The position numbers and the translations under genes are program-made. Under the pieces are notes generated by a model. That model worked only from the letters and a program-made list of their open reading frames with translations. It made no database searches and was not told the origin of the DNA. A DNA stretch of 64,000 nt from Neoechinorhynchus agilis (Eukaryota > Animalia > Acanthocephala), in NCBI GenBank assembly GCA_051530055.1, contig JBMGUZ010000004.1:1-64000 (forward strand). The letters run 5' to 3'. This document shows positions 4,801 through 60,516 of the stretch, one piece after another (within the stretch, counting starts at the first letter, position 1; each line of letters starts with the position of its first letter).

Positions 4801-6290
4801 CAAATAAAAACTCGAAATTTTAAAACGCATTCGTGTGCTCGCCCTTAGTGCTTCACTTAAATTAGACGCGCTTTTGGAAAACATTATCAATAAAATAAAA
4901 ACAAGAGATTACAAAATGCATACTTGTACTCACTGTTAGATCTTTACAATAAATTAGACGCGCTTTTGGAAAACATTATCAATCAAATAAAAATTCGAAA
5001 TTTGAAAACGCATTCGTGTGCTCACTCTTAGTGCTTCACTTGAATTAGACGCGCTTTTTAAAAACATTGTCAATTAAATATTATCTCGAAATTATAAAAC
5101 GCATTCGTGTGCTCGATCTTAGTGCTTCACATAAATTAGACGCGCTCTAAGAAAACCTTGTCAATCAAATAAAAACAAGAGATTACAAAATGCATACGTG
5201 TACCCACTCTTAGATCTTTACTTTAATTTAGAAACGCTTTTGGAAAACATTATCAATTAAATAAAAATTCGAAATTTGAAAGCGCATTCGTGTGCTCACT
5301 TTTAGTGCTTCAGTTAAATTTGACGAACTTTTGGAAAACATTACCAATCAAATAAAAAAAAGCGATTTGAAAACGCATTCGTGTACTCACTGTTAGATCT
5401 TCACTTAAATTTAGACGCTCTTTTGGAAAAGATTATCAATCAAGTAAAAAAATAGATTGTAAAACGAATTAATGTACTAACTCTCAGTGCTTAACTTTAA
5501 TTTGGACGCGCATTTGAATAACATAGTCAATCAAATAAGAGCTCTTGATTAAAAAACGCATCCGTGCACACACTCATTGAACTTTACCTTAATTTAGACG
5601 CGTTTTTCGAAAACATTATTAATCAAATAAAAACTCGAGATTTGAAAACGCATTTGCGTGCATATTCTTGGCGGTTAACTTTAATTAAGACGCGCTTTTA
5701 TAAAATATTATCAATACAATAAAGACGAGATTTGAAGACGCATTCGTGTACTCACTCTCAGATCTTCACTTTAATTTAGGCGTGCTTTTAGAAAACATTA
5801 TCTATTCAATTAAAACTCGAGATTTGAAAACGCCTTCGTGTGGTAATTAGTTGTGATTCGCTTGAATTTGGACGCGCTTTTGGAAAACATTATCTATTCA
5901 ATTAAAACTAGAGATTTGAGAACGCATGCGTGGGCTAATTAGTTGTGCTTCGCTTGAGTTTGAATGCGCTTTTGGAAAACATTATCAATACAATAAAAAC
6001 AAGAGATTAAAAAACGCACTCGTACACTTACTCCAGCGCTTCACATTAATTTAGATGCGCTTTTTAAAACATCATCAATACAATAAAAACAAGAAACTTT
6101 AATACGCCTTCGTGTACTCACACCTAGTGCTTCGCTTTGACTTATACGCGCTTTTGAAAAACACTATCAATATAATAAAAACTGGAGATTTCAAAACGCA
6201 TTCGTGTACCCACTTTTAGTGCATCGGTGTAATTTAGAGGCGCTTGTGGAAAACTTAATAAATCAAATAAAAAAATCGAAATTTGAGCAG
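1890..6290 (+). repeat. 80-bp tandem satellite (~55 units) with a 160-bp A/B dimeric core at ~3240-5340
   Basis: TTTAATTTAGACGCGCTTTTGGAAAACATTATCAATCAAATAAAA repeats every ~80 bp; variants ACAAGAGATTAC..AGATCTTTAC and CTCGAAATTTG..GTGCTTCAC alternate. Confidence 0.95.
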
Positions 6291-7330
6291 TTATACCGAA
6301 CACAATCGGCACATTTAATAAACGACTACGCAGGCCCCTTATTTATTAAGAAAATAGCCGCCGCTTGGGACTTTTTGCCCACTGATTTCACTAAGATCGA
6401 TAGTAAGTGGAGAACGCGGCTTAAGAGCATATTGCAGCCGCCCCGACACGTTTCGGACGGTGCGTTCCACCTACCACTGTCTAGGTTATCGATCAATCTA
6501 CAACGAAATCATGACGATGCGCTTTAATTCCGTTCAAAAAGTGCTGGCCCGGTTTAATGGCCTTGTCAATGTCTCAAAGGAGGTAACGCAAATTAATAAG
6601 TTCCTCGAAGATCTAGGAATCAACGAACAATGCGGGAGCTTGAATGTCAATATAAACATTAATTCTTCTATTCACAGATCATTGATAAGTCTCTGGAAAG
6701 AGGCAATGACTCAAAGTCAAGGGCTCGACTGTTTCACGAATGGCATGTTCGAACGGAATTTAATCTCCTTCCGGTATCGGCAAGACCGGTACAGTTCATA
6801 TGTCGAACAAGTAAAGCTACGGCTTCAAATATTGGACGTAGGTTCGGTGTTGGCACGAATGGATCCCAAGCGGAATAAGTCATGTCGACACTGCACGGCT
6901 TCAGATGAGACACAAGTTCATGTGTTGAACATGTGCGACCACTCCTCAACATCGATATCCAAAAGACATGATCATGTGCAGAGTCGACTTACTTGGACAG
7001 TGAAGAAGAAACAAGGCGTAGACTTCGAGGTCGTCGAAAGAAATAGATTCCACGATTCGGCCGGCAATCTTTACAAGCCAGATCTTATCCTGCATGACAA
7101 GCGCAATGGTACAGTATATATTGCCGATATTGTGGTATATTATGAGACTAATGGTCACCGTGCCGAGGAAATAATGTATGAAAATGAAGCAAAGTATCGC
7201 CCAATTGTACCGGTAGTCGCGCAAATATACAATTTTAAAGAACATCAAGTGCGCACAATCGGTCTTGCAGTTGGGTCAAGAGGCACCTATAGCCATTGTC
7301 TTCTTAAGCGGCCACGGATCCTACACATAA
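6290..7330 (+). mobile_element. R2-clade non-LTR 3' fragment (RT thumb, CCHC finger, restriction-like endonuclease)
   Basis: TQSAHLINDYA, DGAFHLPLS, CRHC..HVLNMC, KRHD, KPDL..IADIVVYYE; colinear with ORF 12689-16030. Confidence 0.9.
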
Positions 7331-7334
7331 GCAT

Positions 7335-8380
7335 ACGTACTGCACGTAACGCTCCCATGACTATTCGAAATAGACATCTTCAAATACACTCAGATCTTGG
7401 CCACCCAGAGTCACCAGATTCTCACACTTTATCAAGGAAAACAACCTACCGTATACGATCGATGAAATACGACAAGTATGTTCCGAATGTCAAACGTGTT
7501 GCCGTATAAAACCAAGATTGCTAAAATCTAACAATCTTCACCTTGTTAAGGCAACAAAACCTTTCGAACGTTTATCCGTCGATTTTAAAGGCCCTTTGCC
7601 CTCAACTACAAATGGAATGGCTTATCTTTTCGTTTCTGTGGACGAATTCTAACGGTTCCCGATTGCTTTCGCTGCCAGAGACTGTTCTGCCGAAACTGTT
7701 AAATTATGTATACGGCAAATATTCGCCATTTTCGGTTGCCCTGCTTATGTTCACTCGGACAAAGGAGCTTCATTCGTATCTCTAAGCGTACGTTCATGGC
7801 TAAACAGCTTAAGAATCTGTATCAACAATACGACAGCATTTCATCCACAGGGAAACGGGCAGTGTGAGAGAACTAACGGGACAATCTGGAGGACAATTTA
7901 ACTCATGTTCGCCGACAAGAATCTACCGTCAAATCGATGGTCTGACGTCCTCCCCGAAGCCGTTTCCAGAATACGTTCCTTGCTGTGCACGAGTACGAAT
8001 GCGTCCCCTCATCAACGAACCCATTACCTTCCTGGATCACTGAAAATAGAAACGCGTATCTGAAAACCATGCCACAGCGATCGAAATACGACGATAAAGT
8101 ATCCGAAGTCGAGATTATTGAGGGAAATGAAAAATACGCCACAATCGAACATCCGAGCGGTCGCCAAGAGATTGTCTCCAGCCAACGACTAGCGCCTTTT
8201 GGAACGTACAACTTGGCCGAGGACACGAGGACAAGGAGGATCCAGGCAACTCTCAGTCTCCGATTGGTAACAATTCTAACAATTCCTCGCGTCCGACGAG
8301 TGAATTGGGATCCTGTTGGGTTCAAGAAGACGGACGAGATGTAAAAGGATCCTGCCGACTTCCGTTTTCAAACAAGGGGT
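7335..8380 (+). pseudogene. Ty3/Gypsy integrase remnant with polypurine tract
   Basis: Hand translation gives GHP-VTRFSHF..CSECQTC (Zn-binding), VDFKGP, HSDKG, GNGQCERTNG (DDE) with stops and a frameshift; AAACAAGGGG precedes TG at ~8385. Confidence 0.85.
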
Positions 8381-8384
8381 AAAT

Positions 8385-8529
8385 TGTGGTATATATTATC
8401 ATAATAAAAACACAATATCAATATGCACCCCAGTTGCATAATACGCTAACAGTGTGAATGCGTGACTGCGCGAACCGCTGGCATCGTTTAGTTTTTATTT
8501 GAAAATAAAGCCTGAAGTTTGGTATCAGA
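8385..8529 (+). repeat. Putative short LTR followed by PBS-like TGGTATCAGA
   Basis: Starts TGTGG right after the PPT, contains AATAAA; no terminal CA seen. Confidence 0.4.
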
Positions 8530-9110
8530 ATCAGCATTCGACCGTCTGAACCACAAATCCATTTTAAAAGCATTAAAGGACTACAAGTACCTAAAGCTAC
8601 CGTACGGCAAGACCACAAAGAAGATAAAGATAACGAGAGGTGTCTTTCAAGGTGATCCACTATCTCCGTTGCTATTTTGTTTAACGATCGACGCGGCACT
8701 TTCAAAAAACCCGAAAAGCCAATTTCGGCAAGAAGGCATTCTAAACCATCTGGCTTGCGCCAATGATGAAGTCCTCATTGCGAAAGACGCCAGTGACCTT
8801 CAAGCACAGTAGGACGCTCTTACAAGTGCACTGAAGCAAAGTGGACAACATCTAAGTGCAGAAAAATCATGTGCTTAAGCACAGGACTTTAAGGACGGTC
8901 GACTGCGCGAATTAACAGAAACGTGAATCCTGTTAGGATAGGGCTGTCTACAAAATATAACCAGCGATGCAATTTCAAGACCAACTAAATAAGTGACTTC
9001 TGAAGATTAACAGCGCGAGACTCAGACCCACTCAAAAAGTTAACTTGTTCAACGATTATGCGGTTCTAAAAATCATCCATCAACTGGGAAGTGAACCTCG
9101 CGTATACTTG
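8529..9110 (+). mobile_element. R2-clade RT fragment
   Basis: SAFDRLNH, GVFQGDPLSPLLF, degenerate YADD (CAND), PTQKVNLFNDYAV. Confidence 0.8.
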
Positions 9111-10600
9111 CCTCGCTCGCGTACAGACGCCTCGCTCACTTAATGACAAGATGCCTCCCCGCTTCCGAAATTACTTGGAACGCGAGCGTAAAATAATGCG
9201 CAATCACTCAGGGCAATCAATTCCCAGTTTTTGAAAGAATTCGAGGTCGATGCAGCTATTACTTACGATGTGGGAAGCCGATCAATTTCGAGTCAAATAC
9301 GTGTTCAAAGGCAAAGGAGTTAGGACTTCGAATTGTGGAACTTAGAAAGTCACGAACGATCGCGTTGTCCGCCGTTGCGTTTCATATTTTTGACAATCCG
9401 GCCTTCTTTCGAAAAGTTCATGCGCAACTGCTTGAAGAAATCGGAGCAAATCTATCATACTTCGAAAGTCTCTGTCAAGCACTGCCGGACGCAAACATTA
9501 CAATAGAAGATGTGATTGAAGCGATACAGAAATGCCAAGTGCTATCACAACAGTTTATATTATGGGCAGCTGCGTCCGCTTATGAATGCGACTTCGTTGT
9601 AAATGGGTCAAATACAAGTGCTCCTCTAAGGATTCGATCCAGAAAAATAGCCAAGGCAACAGAACAGGTCTTTATCCACGCGTTCGAGTCTGCGCTGTTA
9701 ATAACACGCAATCGAAGGACATGAGCAGACAGTGTAATAGAGCCTTATATTTCAACAATACTGCGCGGTCAGAAAACATTAATCCATTGACTGTGAACAA
9801 GCTTTACTGTGATCTCTTCCAAGGAACCTGCCAACAAAATTTTACCCAACACAGATTACATGACGATACCTCATCACATAAAAATTGACCGATTATTACA
9901 AATGAGGAAATCAAAAGTGCTATTTGAGGAATAAAACCAGGAAGTGCACTAGGGCCCGACAAAATATCGCTGCGAATTATAAAAGCATTTAATCGCGATC
10001 TTGTTGGTTTGACCGTTCTTTTTAACTCAATATTGCGACTAGAACATCCTAAAAAAGCATGGCTGGAGAAAAAACAATTCTCCTCCCAAAGAGCAAATGG
10101 AACTCACCGTCATATACATATCCAAAAATCTCTGAGATCGATCACTATATCTTCGATTTTGCTATGAACCTTCAATCGGATAATACTTGCAAGATTTCGA
10201 TCATAATGTCCAGTATTTGGACATCAAACCAGAATAGACAAAGAGCGACCCGGTGCTTTCCGCCCCTGTTCGTGTCCAAACGAGACCTCCATCCTATCAA
10301 CGAGTGTCCAAAAGTAATTGCTGCCATGATATACCGACAAGACGGAGTACTTCGCAGACTCAGATGGACCCTCTTGACAAAGTTCTTCGATGCCGTGGAA
10401 TTGGTCGAAAACTATAGGCTCCAAACCGTCGACGGAAAACCCCTCAAACGTGATCTTACCCTTCTTGACCGTCGGACAAATGAAGTCAAGGTCATTGATA
10501 TAGCAGTGTTATTGTGAAACTCACAAAGACCGGGGCGAAGAAGTGATGGCACATAAAGAGGATAAGTATAGAGCAATAATTCCTGCAGTGGCAAAGTATT
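9110..10600 (+). mobile_element. Internally deleted R2 copy (OTU-like region, RT N-terminus, endonuclease end)
   Basis: ELRKSRTIALSAVAFHIFDNP, SALGPDKIS, KTILLPK, DLTLLDRRTNEVKVIDIAV. Confidence 0.8.
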
Positions 10601-10619
10601 TTAAAGCAAATACCCACCT

Positions 10620-11110
10620 GCACTGGTCATTCTAAACTTTTAAACGAAAAGATTGCGGACGCGCAAGAGAAGAAAGCAATAATCGATGTAAATCATTGAA
10701 TTTGCAACAACCGGTGTCACGCAGGAGTGATGAATTCGATGAACGTGTTGCTTGCGATATATGCAATCCAATGATCTATGGCTTGGGTTTCTGCAGTGCA
10801 ATTGTCGACCGGTTAAAGAGGGACCACCAATCGTCGATTATCGCGGTTAAATACGGCTCGTGTCATAAAAATATAACGACGTGGTATCTGCACGCAGCCA
10901 TGTTAACCAATGTCGGGAAAAAGATGAATTAAAGAAAACGCAACCAATGGCAGAGCCGCAGTGTATCACTGCATCCTCAAATGCTATATCAATAATCCCC
11001 CGTCTGCCGTATGATTGAAGACCTCACGTTTTGTACAATACAAACTCAACGCAGGCGATCGACCTATTGAATGACTACGGAATTCCTCTCATGTAATCGC
11101 GAAGCTACAA
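10620..11110 (+). mobile_element. Degraded R2 pieces (N-terminal zinc finger; RT-thumb scrap)
   Basis: ACDICNPMIYGLG..DRLKRDHQ resembles ECSECYATFHG..DHLMHEHG; TQAIDLLNDYGIP at ~11045-11090. Confidence 0.5.
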
Positions 11111-11120
11111 AGTGCCCATG

Positions 11121-11261
11121 TGTAGTGATTTGCGTAGTGACGCAGATGCCATGATCTGCATAGTGACGCAAATACACATGATATATACAGTGGTAGTGAT
11201 AGCGTGCGATGGGAATATAAAAGTTATTGTAACTCTGCTCATGACATCTATTGGTGACAGC
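11121..11261 (+). repeat. Putative LTR (TGTAGT...GACA) plus PBS-like TGGTGACAGC
   Basis: TG...CA ends, TATA-like AATATAAAA, TGG-starting PBS-like motif 5 nt downstream. Confidence 0.4.
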
Positions 11262-11267
11262 CCATGG

Positions 11268-11920
11268 GAACAACATTTGGACATAGATCAGCCGATCTTA
11301 AGAAAACGTGCAAATTCGTGATTAAGCGTGTTGCATATCGCAATATAATCGAAAGGGAATCGGATTAATATTCGTGAGCCAGGATGCGGCTTATGCTTGA
11401 TCTATTCAGCAGGACGGTGGCCGCAGAAGTAGGAATCCGCTAAGGAGTGTGTAAAAACTCACCTGCCGAATCGACTGGCCCTGAAAATGGATGGCGCTGG
11501 GGACGTATATCCATGCTTGACCGTCAATTCCAGACACAAATGTACAAATGGCTTGACGTGTAGAAGGGCGTTTGCGGTGTTGAAACTTGCACCGTGAGGT
11601 GGAGTGGAGCCGCCGCTAGCGCAGATCTTGGTGGTAGTAGCAAGTATTCAAATGAGAGCATTGAAGACTGAAGTGGAGAAAGGTTCCTTGTGAACAACAT
11701 TTGGACATGGATCAGCCGATCCTAAGAAAACGTGCAAATTCGTGATTAAGCGCGTTGCATTGCGCAATACAATCGAAAGGGAATCGGGTTAATATTCAAG
11801 AGCCAGGATGCGGTTCATGCTTGATCTATTCAGATGCAATGTGATTTCTGCCCAATGCTCCGAATGTTAAAGTGAAGAAATTAATTTAAGTGCGGGTAAA
11901 CGGTGGACGTAACTATGACT
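11268..11920 (+). rRNA. 28S rRNA: Rearranged 28S rRNA fragments ending at the R2 upstream target
   Basis: CAGGACGGTGGCC..GGAATCCGCTAAGGAGTGTGT, GCAGATCTTGGTGGTAGTAGCAA, CGAAAGGGAATCGG, AATGTGATTTCTGCCC..GGGTAAACGGTGGACGTAACTATGACT; 11268-11408 is duplicated at ~11690-11833. Confidence 0.93.
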
Positions 11921-11978
11921 AATGACAACTCAACCAAATTTCACAAGTCCATAGTTATCTTCCCATTCTACCGAGAAC

Positions 11979-12675
11979 TTGGCGCTCCTCATTGTAGATG
12001 GCGCCAATCAACAACCAACGCGTGATCAACGGCTGACAACTGCAATTACTCGTCAGCAAATGTCAGATGATCATCCAGGAAAAACACCAACTGAACCAAG
12101 GCCAAACGATCAATTACGAGAAGAACGATGTGGTTATTTTAATGTCAAGATAATATACTAAATAACGGAAGACGACTCAATGAAGTGCCACCTCTGCTCG
12201 GTAACATTTGTTGGTGGAACTCAGAAGCGGCTTCATCTGCAACATCTTCATGCACAGCATCAGGTCAAGGTTACAGTTTGGATGCGCCCGTTGTGTAATG
12301 AGTACGAACATAAAGAATCGCGCAGTGTCGGAATCCACCTACGCCGATGTAAAGCAAAGTTTCCGGATGAATTCCGAGCAGCTATAAGCCGACCGACAAA
12401 TAATCCAGTGAATACAATGGTAAGCGTCGACGCCAATATTAGCTATAATGGTTCAGATGAAATTCCTGCGAAATGTCCAGTTTGCGACTTCTCTCTCCTA
12501 GGAATCGGTCGGTACAACAGCATTGTGTCTCACGTTGAAAGTGTCCCGAAGCATCGATGATAAACTTCAGATGCTCTCTATGTGGGACATTTTTCGCAAG
12601 CCTTGCCTCTATACGGTCCCACACTAACCATTGTACGGCGCGACCTTCTTTTGACAAAGTCAATTCCTCCAACTA
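11979..12675 (+). pseudogene. Frameshifted R2 N-terminus with four zinc fingers
   Basis: CHLC..HLHAQH; (C>R)PLC..HLRRC; CPVC..SHVESV; after a frameshift CSLC..SHTNHC. Confidence 0.8.
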
Positions 12676-12688
12676 ATCTCAAGCGTTT

Positions 12689-15600
12689 ATGCCTTTGATC
12701 CAAACCAGCCAAGATCGTCAACATGGACACCTCAATACATCGCGCGAGCCGCTACAAGTAAACTCGTCATCTATAATTGGAACTCCATCGTCTCAAGTGA
12801 GCGATGTGATAGATAAAGAGGACTACCCACCCTCTGCCCGTTCACTCGCCTTGGCGGGTGGCATGGACACGGACAGTAGCTGTGAGTTAATGTCAAGCCA
12901 TAAGCAGTCAAATAGTCGGTGTGAAGGGGACACCAATAAGGCTGACTGCCCTACAGTGCCGACTGTGTTCACAGCGGCAGAAGCATATGAATGCGTAACG
13001 GAGGAGCTGAGCGGGAATAACCTCCACCCAAGATACCGAAAGTTTCTTGAGTGTGAGGGCAGTACCCTTCGTTGTTGGAACGGTCCTCTTGATGGGCAAT
13101 TCGTTGATGCGGCAGCTACCAGGTATGCCCAATACCTGCGTTGCGGATGGAGCGCAGAGTTACCCACTGTCTCCAGGGCACGAGCAATCGGTCTAAAGAT
13201 AGTAAAGCTTAGACAGGGCCCTCGCCAAGCCCTTTGCGCCGTTGCTTACCATGTGCTAGGCAACCCTTCACTGTGGAATAGAGTACTTACGAAGCTCACA
13301 GTGGAGGTCCAAAACAACTTGGAGTACTATGCGCAGGTTGCGCGAAGCGTCTTCGACGCTAATCTTCTTGTAGACTACCATCTAAGTAGTCTTCGTCAAG
13401 GCAGCGTAGTATCTCCAATGTTCGTTTTGTTCGCTGCTGCTTACTCTGTTGATTTTACGGCGCATAACCCCTGGGAGAGACAAGAGCGTCGTGTGTTCTG
13501 TCCGGGTCTTGGAACGCGGGTGTTTAACATCTGGATTCATGATTCAGGCACTTATCCTTGCGTTAGGTGTCGGGGTCCGAACCGGTTTCAAGATCGTGAG
13601 CTGAAAAGGAGGCGCAACCGTGCTTTGTATTTCGCAAATACCTCCAAACTAGCTGCGGAGGTGTTCAAGGATGCAGGGCGTAGAGAGTGTACACTGCAAG
13701 CGCAAGACACAGTGGAACACTACCGGAAACTCTTCGAAGGGGATGCTTTGTCTGACAATGCGCCTGAAAGTACTGTTGCACAAGATCAGCAAGTGTCGGA
13801 CGAGCAATGGCCGTCGATCACAACGGCTGAAGTCCAAGAGACCCTTAAAGGCATGAAGACTTCAAGCGCATCGGGACCCGACAAGATAACGATCAGAGAC
13901 GCCCGCGCATTTGATCCGCATCTTCTGGGGATGACGTTGTTATTTAACTACGTCATTCAGTACGGTAGCCCACCACAGGCATGGTTAGAGGCTAAGACAA
14001 TCCTACTGCCCAAAACAAGTACGTCGCCGCAGAAGCTGAAGATTCAGAGCGGATGGAGACCGATTACGATTTCCTCTATTCTGATGCGGGTCTCGCACCG
14101 TATTGTTCTTCGAAGACTTCAAAAAGTATGCTGTCTTGATGATGTCCAAACGGCGTTCGATCCTTCGGCCTGTCTGGCTAATCTCCTCACTCTTAGAAGT
14201 GTGTTGAGAGAAAAGAGGGCGAACAGGCAACCTCTTGCAGTTGCTGTGTTAGACATAAAAAGTGCGTTTGACACTGTCTCACACGCAGCTGTGGAGGAAG
14301 CACTTCGTAACAGCGGGAGTCCAAACTACCTGAGAAGGTACGTTATGAATTCATATCGCGGAAGCTTTACGAAGATCCGGATGGCAAGCGCAAGACCCTC
14401 GAATCCCATCGAGTTCCGCAGAGGAGTAAAGCAAGGGGACCCCTTATCCCCTCTGCTGTTCGCGCTGACAGTAGACGAGGCACTGCGGGAGGTTCGTAAC
14501 TTAGAACTTGGAGCACAGCTTAAGGGAGGTATTCGTTTGTCGCACCTTGTGTACGCAGATGATGTCCTCTTGATGGCTGATGATTGTGCGAATCTTCAAC
14601 AACAGATTGACATTTTGCAACAGAAGCTTAAGGAAAAAAGGCTCTTCTTAAGCCCAGAAAAGTGTCAAACATACACGCACAGCTATAAATATAATATGCT
14701 GACGATAGACCGAGAGTCGTGCATTCATGTCAACGGTACACGGCTTAAGGCCATCGTAGAAGGTGACCCGGTTAAGTACCTAGGTGGCACTCCTTTTAAG
14801 GAAACCACCTTAGATGAAGGCTTAAACGTCCTCGAGTCCCTTTTTGCTGCGACAAGACGCGCTCTTGTTTCACCCACACAAGCTGCGCACTTGCTTAATG
14901 ACTACGCGGTGCCGGTCCTACTGGCAAAGCTCGCTGCCAGTTGGGATATATCGTCTACCAATCTAAGGTGTCTATGCGAGCAGTGGAGATCCAAGCTTAA
15001 GTGTCTCCTCAAGCTTGCGAAGAACATCAGCGACGGCGCATTTTACCTGCCACTTTCCAGTAGTGGTCTAGGCTTCCGAAACCTAGAACACGAGGTACAA
15101 TGTACAAGGCAAAAAGCCCTAGATACAGTGGTAGATAAATTCGGAGGCGCAATAGATCTTCACAAAGAACTCAGTTCAGTTAACGACTACTTCCGCAGGC
15201 TAAGTGGCGGGCTTGGCAGCCGGAGCGAGCTTAGTGAGTCCTCTCCACATCGGCTTTTCCTAAATACACAAATAAAAAAGTGGAGAGAGGCAACGACGCA
15301 AGCGGTTGGTCTTGACTGCTTTACGGAAGGACATGTTGACCGGAGTCTCGCAACGTTCCGTTACAGACAAGGGCATCATCGCTCTTACGTGGAGCATGTT
15401 AAGTTACGGCTCCAATTGTTGGAAGTAGGTACAGTTCTGAACCGAATGGATCATCAGCGCGGTAAATCATGCAGGCATTGCAGTTTCCCGGTTGAGTCCT
15501 GTGCTCATGCCCTCAACGGATGTGAGTATGCCTCTGCAATAATGACCCGGCGTCACGACAAGGTGCAATCGCGCCTTGTTTGGACACTGACGAATAAGCC

Positions 15601-16030
15601 TGGAGCGCGATTTGAGGTTGAGCTGCAGAACCGATTTCATGATGAAAAAGGTAACCTGCATAAGCCTGACCTCATTTTGCGCGACAGAACTTCGGGCAAG
15701 GTGTACATTGCTGATGTTGCAGTGTACTATGAGACAGGACGAGACAGGGCTGAAGCCGTCATGAGTGGCAAAGCAGATAAATACCAACCCTTAGTCCCCG
15801 TAGTTGCGAAACACTATGAAATCCCGACATATAAGGTTTCCACTATCGGATTAGCTGTGGGTTCGCATGGCACCTTCAGCCCTTCTTTGTTACGCCGCCT
15901 GAAGCTCCTCTCCGTGGGTCAACGCACTGCGCTGAATATGGCAAAGACTGCGGCCGAGCAGTCGCTGGCTGTGTTCCATGTTTTCATGGGCAGACGTTGG
16001 GCCTTAAGAGATACAACGGACAACGTCTAA
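12689..16030 (+). CDS. R2 polyprotein body (OTU-like domain, reverse transcriptase, CCHC, restriction-like endonuclease), 1113 aa
   Basis: SGPDKIT, WRPITISS, LDIKSAFD, GVKQGDPLSPLLF, YADD, KYLG, CRHC..HALNGC, RRHD, KPDL..ADVAV; uninterrupted. Confidence 0.95.
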   Translation: MPLIQTSQDRQHGHLNTSREPLQVNSSSIIGTPSSQVSDVIDKEDYPPSARSLALAGGMDTDSSCELMSSHKQSNSRCEGDTNKADCPTVPTVFTAAEAYECVTEELSGNNLHPRYRKFLECEGSTLRCWNGPLDGQFVDAAATRYAQYLRCGWSAELPTVSRARAIGLKIVKLRQGPRQALCAVAYHVLGNPSLWNRVLTKLTVEVQNNLEYYAQVARSVFDANLLVDYHLSSLRQGSVVSPMFVLFAAAYSVDFTAHNPWERQERRVFCPGLGTRVFNIWIHDSGTYPCVRCRGPNRFQDRELKRRRNRALYFANTSKLAAEVFKDAGRRECTLQAQDTVEHYRKLFEGDALSDNAPESTVAQDQQVSDEQWPSITTAEVQETLKGMKTSSASGPDKITIRDARAFDPHLLGMTLLFNYVIQYGSPPQAWLEAKTILLPKTSTSPQKLKIQSGWRPITISSILMRVSHRIVLRRLQKVCCLDDVQTAFDPSACLANLLTLRSVLREKRANRQPLAVAVLDIKSAFDTVSHAAVEEALRNSGSPNYLRRYVMNSYRGSFTKIRMASARPSNPIEFRRGVKQGDPLSPLLFALTVDEALREVRNLELGAQLKGGIRLSHLVYADDVLLMADDCANLQQQIDILQQKLKEKRLFLSPEKCQTYTHSYKYNMLTIDRESCIHVNGTRLKAIVEGDPVKYLGGTPFKETTLDEGLNVLESLFAATRRALVSPTQAAHLLNDYAVPVLLAKLAASWDISSTNLRCLCEQWRSKLKCLLKLAKNISDGAFYLPLSSSGLGFRNLEHEVQCTRQKALDTVVDKFGGAIDLHKELSSVNDYFRRLSGGLGSRSELSESSPHRLFLNTQIKKWREATTQAVGLDCFTEGHVDRSLATFRYRQGHHRSYVEHVKLRLQLLEVGTVLNRMDHQRGKSCRHCSFPVESCAHALNGCEYASAIMTRRHDKVQSRLVWTLTNKPGARFEVELQNRFHDEKGNLHKPDLILRDRTSGKVYIADVAVYYETGRDRAEAVMSGKADKYQPLVPVVAKHYEIPTYKVSTIGLAVGSHGTFSPSLLRRLKLLSVGQRTALNMAKTAAEQSLAVFHVFMGRRWALRDTTDNV

Positions 16031-16131
16031 TTAACAGCCAAAGGACAAAGAGAAAAGGAAACAAACATAAGATTTTCAGTAAAAAATAATTGTCAACAAG
16101 CATGAGAGAGAATTACTAAATAAATGAAGCT

Positions 16132-16132
<1 letters not shown>

Positions 16133-16164
<32 letters not shown>

Positions 16165-16217
16165 TGCATGAATGGATTATTGAGATTCCTACTGTCCCTG
16201 TCTGCAGCCTAGCGAAA
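16133..16217 (+). rRNA. 28S rRNA: 28S fragment downstream of the R2 site
   Basis: TAGCCAAATGCCTCGTCATCTAATTAGTGACGTGCATGAATGGATT..GAGATTCCTACTGTCCC..CTAGCGAAA. Confidence 0.95.
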
Positions 16218-16350
16218 TCATCTGCCCAAGAACATCTGAATAGATCAAGCATAAACCGCATTCTGGCTCGGAAATATTAACTTGATTCACGAATTTGCAC
16301 GTTTTCTTAGGATCGGCTGATCCATGTCCAAATGTTGTTCACATGGAACC
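16218..16350 (-). rRNA. 28S rRNA: Inverted 28S fragment
   Basis: Reverse complement GGTTCCATGTGAACAACATTTGGACATGGATCAGCCGATCCTAAG matches 11685-11725. Confidence 0.88.
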
Positions 16351-19100
16351 AATTGGAGAGATTACATATTGCAAATGTAGCAGCACTTCGAATGGTGCAA
16401 AATAACCGATCCAAAGACAAAAAAAGCATGTTTGTTGTCATGGATGGGACCGAAAACTTTTCGTCAATTGACCAAGGTTGTCACTCGCGAGAAAATATCG
16501 GAGGTGGCATATGATAAGATAATAGAGATAATCGGAAAATTAGCTGGAGGATATGAGCACGAGGTAACAAGCAAGTATCGATTCGCGCAGATGAAAATAA
16601 AGTCGAACCAAAGCTACGAAGAGTGGTTGCAGGGCTGAAGGGAGCTGGCGAAGGATGTTCCTTTTTCAAAGAAGATATTCAAACCGAGGAAGACGCATTG
16701 GCAGACAGAATTCGAGATCACGTGGTGCTGAATACACCACACGAAGCGGTAGGAATATCTGCCCTACAAGAAAACCTCACCTTTGAAATTTTGCGACAAA
16801 TCACTCAGAGGTACGAGACGACTAGAAGAGCGATGGCCATCATTCCAAAGCAGGAATCAGAGCCAGAAGATAAAAATTTTAAAGTGGAGAAAGATCGAAA
16901 AAAGCGACGAAGATATAGAGTGGAAAATAATAGGGGCTGCCCGCGTTGCGGTTACGACCATGATAGAAATCAAGAATGCCGTTCAAAGGGACGCAAATGC
17001 TTTAAGTGCGGGAAAATTGGACACTTCGCTAGGAAATGTCGAATGCAGCAGGTAAAACTGATTCAAGACGAAAATTTGGAATCTAGCGATGACGAAGTAG
17101 AGATCTTCAAAGTCAGTGGAGCTGATAACAGAAAGAACGAACAGTCATGGGTGACCGTACGTTTGAATAATGTGCGAACAAAGATGCAATTCTATACGGG
17201 CGCCGATGTGAGCATTATTTCTCGATCCGTTTGGGAGGCGATTGGACAGCCGACTTTAAGACGGAGTAAAATATTGATAAGTTTCGGTGGATCGAGAATT
17301 CATAGCCTTGGAGAGTGCAGAATTAGTGTACAACTAAGATATATGAAGAGGCAGGTAAAAGCAACAGTCGCGGAAAGCGCCGATAAATATCTGTTCGGAT
17401 TACCATGGTGTCAAAAATTCGGATTGAACATGCTCCGAGGAGTATATGTGAATGCGATAAGTAACGCGACAGATGAAGAAAAGGTTCGTTGTTATTTGAG
17501 GGTACATGAAGAGGTGTTTATCAAAAAGAGAGAACCCATCAAAGATATGATTGTGAAATTACAATTAAGACGAAACGCAGGGCCGATAGTTGCACTTAGT
17601 CGCAGAATATCATATGCATTCAAAACCCAGCAAAGAGAGAAGTAGATAGACTGATCAACGAAGGAATATTAGAGCCGGTGAATGAATCTATAGGAAATGT
17701 GGAATGGGCCACTCCAATAGTGGTCATACGAAAACCAAATAACAAAGTGCGCATTTGTGGTGATTTTAAGGTAACGATAAATAGATTTTTATCCGCGGAT
17801 AGCTATCATATACCTTGTCTGGATGAGGTGGCGCGAAAATTATGTGGAGGAGAGAAGTACTCGACCTTGGACTTAACGGATGCCTATTTGCAATTAAAAG
17901 TGGACGATGAAACGAAAAAGTTGCTCACTGTCGCAACGCTATAAGGGCTGATGAGATATACGAGACTGCCTTTTGGAATTTCGGCAGCTCCCAAAATATT
18001 TCAGAGATTCATGGATGAACTCTTGAAAGACGTTCCGTTCACATGCGCCTATCTTGACGATATCATTATTACGGGAAAAAACGACGATGAGCATTTAAAA
18101 AATTTAAGTAAGGTACTGGGAAAACTGTCGGATGCAGGGGTCGGTATTAGAAAGGAGAAATGTCAATTCTTGCAACAATCAGTCAAGTACCTTGGTCATG
18201 TGTTAAAGAAGGGTCACATGTACGCTAGCGAAGAGAGAGTGGAAGATTTAAGAAGAGCATCCGAGCCGAAAAACAAGAAACAGTTGCAGACATTCTTAGG
18301 AGCTGCGAATTTTTTGGACCGATTCATTCCTGATTTTCACACCATTTGTTCTCCGCTATACGATCTCATTAAGAATCACATTCCGTGGAAATGGGAGAGG
18401 TCCAACAGAAAGGCTTTCAACAAGGTCAAGGAAGCGATATTAAATAATATTAGCTTGAAGTTATACGATCAGAGTAAACCGATAACGCTAGCATGTGATG
18501 CAAGTGATGAAGGAATTGGCGCCGCGTTGTTCCAGCAGGACAAGGCAAGTGGAAAGCAATTACCGATAATGCTAACTTTGAGAAAACTTACACCCACCGA
18601 AAAGAGATATTCAACAATCGATAAGGAGGCGTTGGCGATCGTACATGCGATAAAGCGATTTCATAATTATTTGTATGGAAGAACATTTACGCTGGAAACA
18701 GATCACCAACCCCTCAAACACATTTTCGGGGAAAAGCGTGATCTTAGTAAAATGACTAACGGCAGGTTAGTTCGTTGGGCATTACTGCTTAACGAGTACG
18801 ATTATCAAATACGCCATGTCAAAGGAAAAAGCAACTTGTATGCGGATTGTTTGTCAAGAATGCCAAATGGAACAGCGAAGATATGTGATAACACCGTGGA
18901 CATAAAGAAACTTAAAGCGGCGCAGCAACGGCACACAGAACAGTTGAATCTTTCTTGTCATGTGATTCGACAAGCAACTCGGGAAGATGGAACTCTGAGG
19001 GAGATAAAAGGATTCTTGAGGTATGGCTGGACCATGAACATCAAGGGTCAAAAGTACGAGTTCGACCGAACGATGGATAAAACTGAAGAAGGCATGGGAG
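16345..19100 (+). mobile_element. Mag-like Ty3/Gypsy gag-pol pseudogene, LTRs and integrase missing
   Basis: MLSWMGPK, zinc knuckles CPRC..C and CFKCGKIGHFARKC, protease F(D>Y)TGAD, RT YLDD, RNase H CDASD; stops and frameshifts between ORFs. Confidence 0.93.
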
Positions 19101-19912
19101 AGTGCTGCAACCCCCTACCTTCTATATCGTTACCTACTTTCGTAGGTGCCAGGGAAGTGCAGAGCCAGTTCTTGTCTATGAATCGTGCGGCACAGTCAAA
19201 AAGCAGGTGTGAAGGGGCATCTATTTTATCCGGTCGACTGTGCTTGCGGTAATCGAGGCGTATGAGAGCGTGGTGGATGAGCTAAGCAACAATAATCTGC
19301 ACCCAAGGTACAGAAGTTTTTTTGAGATTTAGAGAGATATTCTCCGCCGATCGGAAGGCTCCATTGATAAAGCAACATACGATTCCAATAATCTTCAAAG
19401 AATTACTCACGTTCATTGAGGCTCCAAGATGCCTTCACTATACCTCGCAACAAAGGTTGAAAGAAACCTTCAGCGCCAAAATCGCTCAATTCATCAGCGA
19501 ACACAACAGAACGATGCGCGGAATGTACGAGCAGCGATAAGAAACAGACGGCGATTTGCAATGTGCAAAAAGCGGAAGAAATATAGTCCGTGAAATTATT
19601 TGGCGCACGTTTAAATTTTTATCATCATTTTTTAATCGAAATAATTTGTGACAATTAGTAATGTAGTCTGCTTGCTCGAAGTCTTTAAATTAGCATGGAT
19701 TTTATTCTTTTTTAAAGGCATTCCATGAAAAATATTCATTATTGATTTAAAGTGCAGTTTTAAGTTTCTCAGAATGAAAATTTATAATCGATTTGTAAAG
19801 CTGGCAGCATATAAAATCGGTTTTCAGCCAGATGGAACGATTGGTGAAAAAGGACTTAGTTTCAAAAAAATTGCAAGCTAAACTTTGCAGCGGAGGATGG
19901 CAAATGGCTTAA
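19100..19912 (+). repeat. R2-fragment-headed dispersed repeat X
   Basis: R2-derived head (AYESVVDELSNNNLHPRYR) fused to a block shared with 21240, 29560, 43600 and 58330. Confidence 0.75.
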
Positions 19913-21230: not shown

Positions 21231-21239
21231 GATTCTAGT

Positions 21240-29668: not shown

Positions 29669-29669
29669 A

Positions 29670-29701
<32 letters not shown>
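29669..29701 (-). rRNA. 28S rRNA: 33-nt 28S remnant (R2 downstream target)
   Basis: Reverse complement TAGCCAAATGCCTCGTCATCTAATTAGTGACGT. Confidence 0.85.
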
Positions 29702-31217: not shown

Positions 31218-31468
31218 TTCCGCCGGACAGTCCCAAGGTATAAGCGGCAGTTGTTGAATATTTGGTCGGGCTATTTGGCACCTTTCGCAACCTTCTACCT
31301 TCCGCCGTATGTCATCTTCTATACCGGGCCACCATGCGTAATATCAGATAGAGCTTTTGTGCCTTCAATTCCTGGATGACCACGATGTAACATATCTAAC
31401 ACTTCCTTTCTCAGAGAAAATGGGATGACAATTCTTTGTAAGTGCATGACAATGCCGTTTTCGCAGGA

Positions 31469-34551: not shown

Positions 34552-36958
34552 ATATCAAGCCTTCGAACTTCTTGCAATTCCTCGTCTAGACAACGCGAAT
34601 AGCAAGGGGGAGAGGGGATCCACTTGCTTTACTCCTCTTCGGAAATTAATAGGGTCTGGCGTTGGGCATACGGATCTTCGTACTGCTTCCGCAGTAAGAG
34701 CTCATCACTTATCTTTGCAGATAGTGAGGACACCCTATTTTACGAAGCGATTCCTCTATGGCAGCCTGTGAAACAGTGTCAAAGGCACTCTTTATGTCGA
34801 GCACACCCACCGCAAAAGGTTTCCTGTTTGCCCGCTTTTCTTTAACAACACTACGAAGAGTTAGTGGATTAGCCATACATGCCGACGGGTCAAACGCCGT
34901 TTGTCCAGCGTCCAGACAGCATACTCTTCGAAGCCGCTTTAGAATGATGCGATGCAAGACACGCATTAAAATGGAGGAGGTCGTAATCGGTCTCCAACCG
35001 GCCTGAGTTTGCAGCTTCTTCGGTGACGCACTTGATTTGGGCAACAGGATAGTTTTGGACTCATTCCACGATTGTGGCGGGCCTCCGTGTTGCATGACGA
35101 AGTTAAAGAGCAACGTCATACCCAGAAGTAACGGATCGAAGGCTCGGACATGTCGAACCGTTATCTTATCCGGACCCGATGCGCTTGAAGACTTAATGCT
35201 TTTGAGGGCATCTTCGACTTCCACCGATGTGAGGACTGGCCAACGTTCCTCTGGAGACTGCTGTTGATCTGCAACAGTACTCTTTAGCAGATTCGCAGGT
35301 TGGACGTTCCCTTCAAATAGACGACGATAATGGTCAATTGTTTCTTGCGGATTCAGTTCATATTCCCTTCTCTCTGCATTTTTAAACACCTCAGCTGCAA
35401 GCTTCGGGGTGTTGTCAAAATCCAGGGCGCGATTTCGTCTCCTCTTGAGCCCACCGTCTTGGTATCTCGTAATACCGCGACATCTAACACATGGATAAAT
35501 GCCGTATACGTCGATCCACACATTGTAAGCGTGTGTTCCAATCCCGGCACAAAAGATTCGACGCACTTGTCTTTCTAAAGGCGAATTTACCGACAAATCA
35601 CTTGAGTATACTGGAGTGGCAGCGAACAAGGGGATACTACGCTATTCTTTAAAAGACCTCCAAGTTGGACTTCCAGAGACACGTTAGCGTCAGAGACGTT
35701 CTGTGCAACTTGGGCATATTATTCCTTGTTGTTTTGAACCTCCATTGTGACTTTCGTTACTACCTTCTTCCACAATGAAGGATTACCCAGTACGTGGTAA
35801 GCCTGAGTCAGACCTTTCCTGAGCTTAATGATCTTAAGGCCTAATGCTCGCGCTACAGAGACTTGAGGCGCCTCGTTACTCCGATCACATCGCAAGTACT
35901 GAGCATATCGCATAGTCGCCGCATTGACAAATTCACCATTAATGGAACCTTCCGATTGACGGAGGATATCTCGCTCCGTCTCAAGAAAACCTCTGTACCT
36001 TGGATGGAGGTTATTCTTGTTCAGCACGTCAACAACACTTTCATACGCCTCGACCACTGTAAAGACAGTCGACTCGATTGAACAATCTGCCATTGTGGTG
36101 CCCCCTTCACACTGGCGTCTTGACTGTGGCGTATGATTTTCATGCAAGAACTGGCGTTGCGTTTCCATGCCACTTACAAGGGTAGGTGAGCGGACAGAAG
36201 GGCTTTCTTCGTTTAATACCTCTGGAGGTTCGCGTTCCTCCTCGCTGACCAGCTCGTTGACCGATTGCTCTGTAGGCGGATCCATTCTGTCGTTTCTTTC
36301 ACTTTCCTGATTATTGGCCACGAATGAAGCCGCATCCCGTCTACATTTGCAGACATTCATGTGGCTCCGGACAGACACATAATTGTCCGACCTGTATGCC
36401 GAACACGCCGGGCATTGATACAACACTGATGTTGATCCGTGTTCGTGCATAAGGTGGTCCTTCAAGACTTTGGTCCGGTTACTCCCGTGGAATGTGGCGT
36501 AGCATTCTGAGCATTCCACGGGTCCCTCTGGCTCTTTGTTAGCGATGATAAGGCCACCTTTCCCTGCTAAATGGGCCACTTTTACGACTGTCTCTTCATC
36601 AAATAGGGCTGCTGCCTTTGGCGGGTTCTTTTTGGAGCACGTCTTAAAGTGTAGGCCAATTGAACAGATGGACTCCTTCGTCAGTCCACATATACCACAC
36701 ATCCATTCCACAGCCTGCTTGTGGAATGATGTCATGTGCTCGCTAATCAATCTCACTTTCGTCTTTCCGGTAAATATCACTTTCGGCTTGCAATCTGGGC
36801 ATTCAATACATTCCTGGTGGACCCGATGGTACTGCAGGTATACTTTTGCATGCCGTTGTTCATTGGTTAGCGCCATCTAGAATGAGGAGCGCCAAGTCCT
36901 CGGTGGAAGGGGGTGTATCCGATGACTCGTCGTCAATTATTTGGTTTCTTTCAGAAGA

Positions 36959-37011
36959 AGTCATAGTTACGTCCACCGTTTACCCGCGCTTAAATTAGTT
37001 TCTTCACTTTA

Positions 37012-45123: not shown

Positions 45124-45161
<38 letters not shown>

Positions 45162-55137: not shown

Positions 55138-55168
<31 letters not shown>

Positions 55169-55225
55169 ATTTTGAATCGAAAAAACTTACAAACACGCGG
55201 GTAAATGGTGGACGTAACTATGACT
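55138..55225 (+). rRNA. 28S rRNA: Permuted 28S micro-linker: 31 nt downstream target, 25-nt spacer, 32 nt upstream target
   Basis: TAGCC..AGTGAC(55168) ... CACGCGGGTAAATGGTGGACGTAACTATGACT(55225). Confidence 0.85.
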
Positions 55226-55486
55226 TTCCTAATTTCCGACAAAGATTCCCTAGGACCCAAAGAAACTATCGAAACTAAAGAAAGCTCATCAGTTTACCCC
55301 CATCCGCCGGGTACGAAGCGCTTCCGCGCTTAAGATGGCGATCTTCCAAACAATCAACCAACTGTTTCAACTGCATCAACTGCTGATTCGACTTATTTTT
55401 TCACCCAAGAGACAAAAAAGTCGAGAGTTAACTCCACATCGACCGGAAGCGAAGCGCATTTTTCAGATGGCGCTTTTCCCGATGAT

Positions 55487-60389: not shown

Positions 60390-60516
60390 TTACACATCTG
60401 AAGAGGAATAAGCACGCGACCCCGGCGGAAGGGGAATAACTATGGACTTGGAAAGTTCAAGGAAGTTCGTAGATTTTGGGAAAGTCATAGTTAAGTCTGC
60501 CATTTACCCGCGCTTA
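60390..60516 (-). mobile_element. R2 5' end (copy 4) with a 34-nt upstream 28S remnant
   Basis: Reverse complement TAAGCGCGGGTAAATGGCAGACTTAACTATGACT, then a UTR sharing AAGTCCATAGTTAT..TCCTC..AGATG with copy 1. Confidence 0.8.

What the first reader, a model, noticed from the sequence alone, without database searches (positions are those of the whole stretch)
11901..11973. Four divergent R2 5' UTRs carry a built-in antisense copy of the upstream 28S target
Seen: the antisense of the last 20 nt of upstream 28S is AGTCATAGTTACGTCCACCG. Copy 1 has AGTCCATAGTTATcttcccaTTCTACCG (11946-11973). Copy 2 (minus strand, 36901-36927) has AGTCATcggatacacccccTTCCACCG. Copy 3 (55283-55309) has AGCTCATCAGTTTACccccATCCGCCG. 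Copy 4 (minus strand, 60423-60448) has AGTCCATAGTTATtccccTTCCGCCG. Spacers are unrelated (25-57 nt). The strand opposite 28S GGTGGA varies (TCTACC/TCCACC/TCCGCC) but keeps pairing through G-U in copies 1-3, always after a C-rich bulge and before GAG/GGG. Inference: either a P1-like helix of an atypical self-cleaving ribozyme that frees the element from the rRNA co-transcript, or an RNA segment that pairs with target DNA as a guide during 5' integration. I could not fit a canonical HDV fold.
Basis: partly seen in the sequence, partly recalled or inferred. Interest (0 to 1): 0.78.

Follow-up and report, generated by a model that had tools for sequence, protein, structure and literature searches.

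The report
R2 leader pairs with upstream 28S
Four dead R2 retrotransposon 5' ends in an acanthocephalan worm's degenerate rDNA each carry an antisense copy of about 30 nt of the 28S rRNA just upstream. The core of this copy sits exactly where R2 self-cleaving ribozymes are known to pair with 28S, but the rest of the usual ribozyme fold cannot be found.

Summary
The complementarity is larger than reported. It runs collinearly over 28S -42..-10 in all four copies, as three helices separated by two internal loops.

The central helix pairs 28S -29/-28..-23 with TCYRCCG. That is the position of the P1 stem of the commonest (-28) class of R2 HDV-like ribozymes (Eickbush 2013). A C-rich stretch before it, G-rich bases after it, a covarying hairpin and then CAA match the order L3 / P1.1 / P4 / J4/2.

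Three things are not standard:
- There is no P3 3' strand, no L3 guanine and no P2.
- The 28S strand also pairs with the bases where P2/P3 5' strands would lie.

Copies 3 and 4 fit canonical 28S far better than their decayed flanks (0/1000 shuffles). Copies 1 and 2 carry a compensatory C-G to U-A change.

The host is Neoechinorhynchus agilis. All four copies are dead, and catalysis is untestable here.

Verdict: a new variant of a known kind, of moderate interest.

The parts
11888..11920 (+). c1: 28S arm (28S -42..-10), AAGTGCGGGTAAACGGTGGACGTAACTATGACT. This is the 5' strand of helices I, II and III.
11921..11945 (+). c1: apical loop ('spacer', 25 nt). It contains AACCAAAT (11932-11939), which resembles 28S +2..+9.
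   Evidence: by analogy with c2
11946..11958 (+). c1: helix III 3' strand, AGTCCATAGTTAT. It is antisense of 28S -21..-10 with one bulged C.
11959..11966 (+). c1: C-rich asymmetric loop CTTCCCAT(T). It sits in the L3 position and can alternatively pair with canonical 28S GGGAG.
11967..11973 (+). c1: helix II 3' strand, TCTACCG. It pairs with 28S -29..-23 and corresponds to P1' of the -28 class of R2 ribozyme.
   Evidence: PMC3774820
11974..11985 (+). c1: purine loop AGA followed by ACTTGGCGC. ACTTGGCGC is the helix I 3' strand (pairs 28S -41..-33), or alternatively the 5' strand of the start-codon hairpin.
11979..12007 (+). c1: hairpin TTGGCGC / GCGCCAA. Its loop holds TCCTC and the ATG (11998-12000). 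It occupies the P4 position and is followed by TCAA.
11921..16132 (+). c1: whole R2 element. Zinc-finger ORF pieces lie at 12180-12676 in two frames, and the RT/endonuclease ORF at 12689-16030. The 3' junction falls at the canonical R2 site, with TAGCCAAATGCC starting at 16133.
36959..36991 (-). c2: 28S arm (-42..-10).
36928..36958 (-). c2: apical loop (31 nt). Infernal aligns its first 20 nt to 28S -9..+9, so this is a degenerate stretch of 28S running across the insertion site.
36889..36927 (-). c2: antisense block. Helix III' is AGTCATCGGATAC (36915-36927), the C-rich loop is 36908-36914, P1' TCCACCG is 36901-36907, AGG is 36898-36900 and ACTTGGCGC is 36889-36897.
36867..36895 (-). c2: hairpin TTGGCGC / GCGCTAA around the ATG at 36876-36874. 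This ATG is the start of the 385-aa N-terminal R2 ORF. The hairpin is followed by CCAA.
55193..55225 (+). c3: 28S arm (-42..-10).
55226..55282 (+). c3: apical loop (57 nt), made of degenerate direct 28S-like pieces: TTCCTAATTTCC, CCCTAGGACCCAAAG and GAAACTATCGA.
   Evidence: direct reading
55283..55346 (+). c3: antisense block and hairpin. Helix III' is AGCTCATCAGTTTAC (55283-55297), C-rich CCCCA is 55298-55302, and P1' TCCGCCG is 55303-55309. GGGTAC follows, then the hairpin GAAGCGC...GCGATCTTC with the ATG at 55335-55337, then CAAA.
60483..60515 (-). c4: 28S arm (-42..-10), decayed to GGCAGACTT.
60449..60482 (-). c4: apical loop (34 nt). It starts with TTCCCAAAAT, which resembles 28S +1..+10.
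   Evidence: direct reading
60409..60448 (-). c4: antisense block. Helix III' is AGTCCATAGTTAT (60436-60448), C-rich TCCCCT is 60430-60435, P1' TCCGCCG is 60423-60429, GGG is 60420-60422 and TCGCGTGCTTA is 60409-60419. No R2 ORF follows.

Best explanation
These are the 5' processing modules of R2 (A-clade-like) retrotransposons of Neoechinorhynchus agilis.

Shown: R2 lies in the 28S gene. Each element encodes a segment that can pair with about 30 nt of the 28S RNA just upstream, forming a long three-helix hairpin.

Inferred: the middle helix (28S -28..-23 with TCYRCC) is the P1 stem of the known -28 class of R2 HDV-like self-cleaving ribozyme. The C-rich loop before it and the G-rich bases after it act as L3 and P1.1. 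The covarying hairpin that holds the start codon acts as P4. Cleavage next to -28 frees R2 RNA from the rRNA precursor and leaves a 28S-derived leader on its 5' end. After reverse transcription, the copy of that leader anneals to the target. This gives the same 5' junction every time and lets the leader co-evolve with its antisense partner.

The module is atypical. It has no separate P3 3' strand or P2. Instead, the 28S strand pairs with the bases where the P2/P3 5' strands would be.
For: 1. Element identity. The 3' junctions lie at the R2 site. There is an RT domain. The best solved-structure matches are R2 proteins, with A-clade R2Tg-type scoring higher than R2Bm.
2. Helix II is the only helix that RNAalifold keeps in all four copies (7 pairs). 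One position shows UA:2, UG:1, CG:1.
3. Target-element covariation. c1 and c2 have TCYACC next to flank GGTGGA. c3 and c4 have TCCGCC, which fits GGCGG.
4. Position. -28 is the commonest R2 cleavage site, with P1 made from 28S -28..-22 (PMC3774820; PMC11331408).
5. The order C-rich / P1' / G[AG]G / hairpin / CAA is kept in the copies. The hairpin stem covaries: TTGG...CCAA in c1 and c2 against GAAG...CTTC in c3.
6. c1 and c2 are 36/39 identical from P1' to the ATG, although their proteins are only 50-66% identical.
7. In c2 the flank upstream of -28 is nearly canonical 28S. Positions -26..-22 carry three changes, and -9..+9 is strongly diverged. This fits an element-borne leader that starts near -28.
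8. A leader containing downstream 28S has a precedent in earwig R2, which cleaves at -28.
9. Duplex statistics are given.
Against: - There is no P3 3' strand between the C-rich loop and P1'. No guanine occurs in the L3-like loop, although that G is described as highly conserved, and R2 copies lacking it (sow bug; a G-to-A copy of Nasonia vitripennis) did not self-cleave. No P2 of 5 bp or more is conserved.
- The strict descriptor search found no more hits than shuffles.
- Rfam finds no ribozyme. This is uninformative, because a canonical R2 control (L056) is also negative.
- Only four copies exist and all are dead. c1 has a frameshift and a stop, c2 is fragmented, c3 is internally deleted and c4 is an orphan.
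- CpG decay alone can create G-U pairs and even the C-G to U-A pair.
- Folding z-scores with present flanks are weak.
- The register of helix I differs in c3.
- c3's 28S leader runs upstream of -28 at a junction that is not genuine 28S. That template RNA was therefore probably not cut at -28.
Confidence: 0.5

Rival explanations
1. It is a non-catalytic structural leader. The roughly 33-bp 28S:antisense hairpin buries the 5' end of the uncapped Pol I transcript. It either blocks 5'-3' exonucleases that trim the co-transcript down to its base, or serves as a protein-binding site. One such site could be a double-stranded RNA copy of the upstream target motif that R2 zinc fingers read on DNA. No ribozyme is involved.
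For: - The complementarity (31-33 nt) is far longer than any P1 needs.
- The HDV core cannot be found.
- 5'-end protection is already proposed as a main role of R2 5' structures (PMC11331408; PMC12222951).
- R2 proteins recognise 28S positions roughly -34..-19 on DNA, which the hairpin spans.
- c3's leader extends beyond -28.
Against: - This does not explain why the conserved single-stranded features mimic the L3 / P1.1 / P4 / J4/2 order.
- It does not explain why helix II is the best-kept helix, while helix III has degenerated in c2 and helix I shifts in c3.
- No nuclease or binding partner can be named from sequence.
Confidence: 0.2
2. It is a neutral fold-back relic. One aberrant integration, for example a template jump of the reverse transcriptase onto the displaced antisense strand of the upstream target, added an inverted 28S copy to an ancestral R2 5' end. 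What we see is its slow decay, with no function.
For: - The antisense covers one continuous 28S block (-42..-10).
- c1 and c4 share the same 15-nt piece, including the same bulged C, which points to a single origin.
- c2's helix III is degenerate.
- R2 reverse transcriptase is known to template-jump (cited in PMC11331408).
- Tandem +33 junctions in the window suggest such jumps happen here.
Against: - The lineages are old: 27-66% protein identity, and loops that cannot be aligned apart from 28S-like pieces. Even so, complementarity persists in all four.
- c4 still pairs with canonical 28S at -40 kcal/mol.
- The P1'-to-ATG block is more conserved than the coding sequence.
- There is a compensatory change at one helix II pair.
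Confidence: 0.15
3. It is an RNA guide. The antisense block pairs with the sense strand of the target DNA upstream of the nick and opens it, so that the cDNA 3' end, which has the same sequence, can take over and prime second-strand synthesis.
For: - The antisense RNA has the same sequence as the cDNA 3' end, which the published model anneals to the target.
- c3 and c4 match canonical 28S, the real target, better than their own flanks.
Against: - The RNA carries its own sense copy only 25-57 nt away, so the intramolecular hairpin would out-compete invasion of duplex DNA.
- c1 and c2 match the variant leader rather than canonical 28S.
- Pairs kept as G-U are poor in RNA:DNA hybrids.
Confidence: 0.08

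Closest known systems
R2 HDV-like ribozyme, -28 cleavage class (Eickbush, Burke & Eickbush 2013, PMC3774820)
   Same: - P1 is formed between 28S -28..-22 and an element-encoded complement.
- The 28S leader is retained on the RNA.
- The 5' junction is uniform and propagated through the RNA.
- A pyrimidine loop precedes P1' and G-rich bases follow it.
- A variable P4 hairpin follows.
   Different: - There is no P3 3' strand, no conserved L3 guanine and no P2.
- The element is also antisense to 28S -21..-10 and -42..-33, which is not described for any R2.
- The start codon lies inside the P4-like hairpin.
- No activity data exist.
Earwig (Forficula auricularia) R2 5' end
   Same: [quoted passage not shown] The ribozyme nevertheless cleaves at -28. 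Here c2's leader aligns to 28S -9..+9.
   Different: The earwig element folds into a complete HDV-like ribozyme and cleaves up to 96% in vitro. No inverted 28S copy is reported for it.
HDV-like ribozymes with long structured J1/2 inserts (Ruminski/Luptak; cited in PMC11331408)
   Same: Helix III plus its loop could be read as a structured J1/2 hairpin closed by 28S sequence.
   Different: In known cases P2 5', P3 and L3 still follow the insert. Here only 5-9 nt separate helix III from P1'.
Twister-sister-like 'lantern' ribozymes of human LINE-1 / OR4K15 (PMC11620745)
   Same: Both are rod-like stems with internal loops at the 5' region of a non-LTR element.
   Different: Those have one conserved 5+6-nt catalytic loop with a C-A cleavage step. 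The loops here (AAA(C)/GAG and CG/C-rich) do not resemble it.

Membership tests
R2 (28S-specific non-LTR retrotransposon) | The 3' junction lies at the R2 site of 28S (...|TAGCCAAATGCC). | tested here: met
   Five such junctions occur in the window, including c1 at 16133.
R2 (28S-specific non-LTR retrotransposon) | A single ORF with an RT domain and a C-terminal CCHC plus restriction-like endonuclease; the nearest relatives are R2 proteins. | tested here: met
   RVT_1 scores 9e-33. The top PDB hits are R2 proteins 9nl3 and 9dou (R2Tg) at 1e-72, above R2Bm 8gh6 at 8e-38. CRHC...H...C and KPD motifs can be read in the translation.
R2 (28S-specific non-LTR retrotransposon) | N-terminal zinc fingers (three in the A clade). 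| tested here: inconclusive
   Three CxxC...H motifs can be read in ORF pieces 12180-12676. Pfam C2H2 matches are only weak, at 0.006. The pieces lie in two frames, so this copy is broken.
R2 HDV-like ribozyme | P1 of 6-7 bp between the cleavage-site strand (here 28S -28..-22) and P1'. | tested here: met
   There are 6-7 pairs in all four copies with their own or canonical 28S.
R2 HDV-like ribozyme | A 3-bp P3 enclosing L3, immediately 5' of P1', with conserved C and G in L3. | tested here: not met
   Only 5-9 pyrimidine-rich nt lie between helix III and P1'. There is no complementary triplet and no G. The descriptor search found 0, 0, 1 and 3 hits against 1.7-4.1 in shuffles.
R2 HDV-like ribozyme | P1.1: two L3 cytosines pair with the bases just 3' of P1'. 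| tested here: inconclusive
   CC(C) lies before P1' and G[AG]G / GGG(G) after it in all four copies, so pairing is possible. The same bases also form a simple local hairpin that competes with P1.
R2 HDV-like ribozyme | P4 hairpin, then J4/2 with a catalytic C, then a P2 3' strand pairing upstream of P3. | tested here: not met
   A hairpin is present and covaries, and CAA follows it in c1-c3. No conserved P2 of 5 bp or more was found (manual search).
R2 HDV-like ribozyme | Self-cleavage of the 28S/R2 co-transcript. | not testable with these tools
   This needs in vitro transcription and 5'-end mapping.
R2 HDV-like ribozyme | A uniform 5' junction that retains upstream 28S (the correlate of upstream cleavage). 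| tested here: met
   All four copies keep 28S intact through -10, followed by diverged 28S-like sequence.
Any Rfam ribozyme family (HDV-like, hammerhead, twister, hairpin, pistol, hatchet and others) | A covariance-model match. | tested here: not met
   There was no ribozyme hit at E<=10 around any copy. The control is weak, because a canonical full-length R2 (L056) also gives none.

The most novel reading that the evidence does not exclude
A naturally rearranged HDV-like ribozyme in which the host 28S rRNA supplies much more than P1.
- The 28S bases just after P1 (C/A-G at -22/-21) would act as the missing 3' half of L3, including its guanine.
- 28S -20..-10 would act as the 3' strands of P3 and P2, pairing with the element's AGTC(C)ATAGTTAT as one continuous helix capped by the 'spacer'.
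- The element's C-rich stretch would be the 5' half of L3, joined directly to P1'.

That would be a strand-swapped topology of the double pseudoknot, held together by target RNA.
Probability: 0.15. Interest if true: 0.75.

Novelty: new variant of a known kind. Interest (0 to 1): 0.45.

Why it matters
R2 is now being engineered for RNA-templated gene insertion. Its 5' module (ribozyme fold plus 28S leader) strongly affects both efficiency and junction precision.

If a lineage processes or protects its 5' end with a long 28S:antisense hairpin instead of the full HDV-like fold, two outcomes are possible. Either it reveals a new topology of the HDV-like ribozyme, or it shows that R2 can do without one.

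It also extends R2 5'-end biology to Acanthocephala. And it gives a concrete case of a transposon leader and its internal partner co-evolving away from the host target sequence.

If it is only the ordinary -28 P1 plus decay, it is a routine annotation.

Tried and rejected
1. Canonical HDV fold. A strict descriptor (P1 from 28S, P3, L3, P1.1, J4/2 C, P2) gave 0, 0, 1 and 3 hits against 1.7-4.1 in shuffles, and none was shared between copies. A loose descriptor gave thousands of meaningless hits. The descriptor has no positive control. L056, a canonical R2, gave only low-complexity hits.
2. Alternative registers. I tried P1 at -36/-40 with L3 = TCCRCCG, and P1 at -21/-19 with helix III. Each fails on P1.1, or on P3, or in at least two copies.
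3. Rfam at E<=10 on all four regions found no ribozyme. The control was also negative.
4. Hairpin-ribozyme and twister-sister-like loops do not match in loop sequence (direct reading).
5. A pri-miRNA-like or RNase III substrate was rejected. Cutting both arms would remove the antisense block from the template, so the block could not be inherited.
6. A metagenome scan for 28S-hairpin relatives returned 51 loci, none in a 28S context.
7. Protein routes to more 5' ends failed. RT homologues are at most 32% identical and lack 28S flanks. An N-terminal profile finds only the window's own ORF.
8. An apparent fifth P1' (TTCTCCGCCG, four copies) turned out to be R2 coding sequence.
9. Other TCCRCCGRG matches, at 49427 and 60931, are chance.

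Full report
**What is there.** The window is a graveyard of R2 elements and decayed 28S pieces, mixed with Ty3/gypsy elements. Rfam finds four 28S fragments. tblastn with the longest R2 ORF finds more than 20 R2 pieces at 27-66% identity. Five R2 3' junctions lie at the canonical site...|TAGCCAAATGCC. Window 6287-18560 is 100% identical to Neoechinorhynchus agilis (Acanthocephala) chromosome CM121342.1, near its start.

Four R2 5' ends follow 28S that ends in ...GTAACTATGACT:
- c1 (junction 11920, + strand) is a near-complete element, 11921-16132. It has RT. Its best structural relatives are R2 proteins, especially A-clade ones. Its N-terminal zinc-finger region is split over two frames and carries a stop.
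- c2 (36959, - strand) has a fragmented ORF.
- c3 (55225, + strand) is internally deleted.
- c4 (60483, - strand) is an orphan 5' end with no R2 ORF behind it.

**Checking the observation.** The complementarity is more extensive than reported. RNAduplex pairs the whole 33-nt 28S flank (-42..-10) collinearly with the element in all four copies. The layout is:
- helix I: 28S GCGCGGGT with ACTTGGCGC or an equivalent;
- an internal loop: AAA opposite G[AG]G;
- helix II: CGGTGGA with TCYRCCG;
- an asymmetric C-rich loop;
- helix III: (G)TAACTATGACT with AGTC(C)ATAGTTAT or variants;
- an apical loop of 25-57 nt.

With each copy's own flank, 6, 3, 20 and 3 of 500 dinucleotide shuffles reach the observed energy. 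With canonical 28S, c3 and c4 reach -33.2 and -40.1 kcal/mol and beat all 1000 shuffles. The hairpin is the MFE fold in all four, but z-scores with the present decayed flanks are modest, from -0.85 to -1.94.

A canonical R2 from a Logan assembly (L056), which has both 28S junctions, shows no such complementarity. Its best duplex is -19.8 kcal/mol, which is at the null level.

**The 'spacers' are partly 28S.** Infernal aligns the first 20 nt after GACT in c2 to 28S -9..+9. c1 and c2 share AACCAAAT (28S +2..+9). c3 and c4 begin with TTCC[T/C]AA, and c3 holds further 28S-like pieces. So the leader is a diverged copy of uninterrupted 28S running across the insertion site. Earwig R2 is the precedent: all its copies carry downstream 28S at the 5' end.

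In c2 the flank upstream of -28 is almost canonical. Positions -26..-22 carry three changes and -9..+9 is heavily diverged. This is what one expects if sequence from about -28 onward travels with the element RNA. The published model says exactly that for R2s that cleave upstream.

**Relation to known biology.** R2 is co-transcribed with 28S. It frees itself with an HDV-like ribozyme. In most lineages cleavage is inside 28S, most often at -28, and P1 is formed by 28S -28..-22 and an element-encoded P1' (PMC3774820; PMC11331408). Helix II is that pairing. It is the helix RNAalifold keeps in all four copies.

Helix II also covaries with its target. c1 and c2 have TCYACC beside GGTGGA. c3 and c4 have TCCGCC, which fits GGCGG(G/A).

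The neighbouring features come in the order expected for L3, P1', P1.1, P4 and J4/2:
- a C-rich loop;
- P1';
- G[AG]G or GGG(G);
- a hairpin whose stem covaries (TTGGCGC/GCGCCAA in c1 and c2; GAAG-CGC/GCG-CTTC in c3);
- then CAA.

From P1' to the ATG, c1 and c2 are 36/39 identical, although their proteins are only 50-66% identical. The conserved AGATGGCG holds the start codon of c2's ORF.

**What does not fit.** Only 5-9 nt lie between helix III and P1'. That leaves no room for P2 5', P3, a full L3 and P3 3'. No copy has a guanine in the C-rich loop. That guanine is described as highly conserved, and R2 copies lacking it (sow bug; a G-to-A copy of Nasonia vitripennis) did not self-cleave. No P2 is conserved.

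A strict descriptor search gave no more hits than shuffles. Rfam finds nothing, but it also finds nothing in the canonical R2 control, so that negative carries little weight. My descriptor has no validated positive control.

**Caveats on the 'G-U conservation'.** The 28S flanks show heavy CpG-to-TpG decay, for example GCGC to GTGC and AACGAG to AATGAG. Transitions turn G-C pairs into G-U automatically. Two mirrored CpG decays can even produce the U-A pair seen in c1 and c2. However, c1 and c2 are separate lineages that share the A, so inheritance from an adapted ancestor is more likely than two coincidences.

c3's 28S leader continues upstream of -28 at a junction that is not genuine 28S. There, 28S +31 of the preceding unit is joined to 28S-like sequence from about -69. 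That argues against -28 cleavage for that particular template RNA.

**Most likely mechanism.** This is the 28S-pairing half of the R2 5' processing module, homologous in position to P1 of the -28 ribozyme class. It defines the RNA 5' end and keeps a 28S leader that templates the 5' junction (confidence 0.5).

ACTTGGCGC can pair either with 28S (helix I) or with GCGCCAA (the start-codon hairpin). One inference is that helix I exists only in the precursor, and that the start-codon hairpin forms after the upstream 28S is released.

The pairing is shown. Its coincidence in position with the known P1 is shown. Cleavage, the site of cleavage and the switch are all inferred.

**Rivals.**
- A non-catalytic protective or protein-binding hairpin (0.2).
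- A neutral relic of an inverted target copy (0.15).
- An RNA guide for target DNA (0.08).

**Most novel reading not excluded (0.15).** A strand-swapped HDV-like fold in which 28S supplies P1, the 3' half of L3 (the CG/AG at -22/-21) and the 3' strands of P3 and P2 (helix III).

**Attempts to enlarge the sample failed.** RT homologues are at most 32% identical. An N-terminal profile finds only the window's own ORF.

**Verdict.** The feature is real. In its core it is already explained by published R2 biology. It has an unusual extended form that deserves a wet-lab cleavage assay.

Noticed in passing
window 55487-56974: An open 451-aa ORF with a picorna/partiti-like RdRp domain (Pfam RdRP_1, 8.5e-30). 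Its best viral relative, at 40% identity, is a 'partiti-like virus'. The ORF runs in the same frame into R2 zinc-finger homology (56669-56974). So c3 is an internally deleted R2 whose N-terminus was replaced by a captured viral polymerase fragment.
   Followed up: partly
L057 10343-11218 (N. agilis CM121343.1, about 2.33 Mb): A 94%-identical copy of the RdRp fragment alone lies on another chromosome, with no R2 or 28S around it. It is annotated as a hypothetical protein. A relative also exists in Pomphorhynchus laevis. This looks like an endogenous viral element that R2 either picked up or spread.
   Followed up: partly
window 6287-18560 = L058 108-12381: The window is from Neoechinorhynchus agilis (Acanthocephala), GCA_051530055.1, chromosome CM121342.1, within about 20 kb of the start of the record. 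The R2/rDNA graveyard is therefore terminal on the assembled chromosome.
   Followed up: yes
window 55138-55195, 58297-58345, 29653-29701: In three places, 28S +1..+31/33 after an R2 3' end is joined abruptly to another R2 piece. One joins c3's leader. Two join a 5'-truncated R2 coding region from about aa 85. The shared breakpoint suggests end-to-end template jumps between R2 RNAs that end about 33 nt into downstream 28S.
   Followed up: partly
window 55446-55480: A second copy of the start-codon hairpin motif (GAAGCGC...AGATGGCGCTT) lies 130 nt after the first, just before the RdRp ORF. Its ATG is in a different frame.
   Followed up: no
window 16133-16250, 45150-45278, 11500-11920: The 28S flanks carry many CpG-to-TpG/CpA changes. 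They also share non-canonical variants in normally invariant stretches, such as CCCTGTCTG[C/T]AGCCTAGCG and GGTGGACG. Either a diverged pseudo-rDNA family evolved in concert, or the N. agilis 28S is unusual.
   Followed up: partly
window 11262-11409 and 11686-11833: A 148-bp direct repeat (91% identity) lies inside the 28S flank upstream of c1.
   Followed up: no
window 16623-19252 and 30444-33532: Ty3/gypsy-type LTR retrotransposon ORFs (zinc knuckle, protease, RT, RNase H) interrupt the R2 array.
   Followed up: no
window 19258-19641, 21225-21804, 29244-29716, 58282-59000: A repeat of at least 400 bp, 89-93% identical, occurs at four or more sites. It starts in R2 N-terminal coding sequence. 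It is probably one 5'-truncated R2 family, or a segment duplicated with its surroundings.
   Followed up: partly
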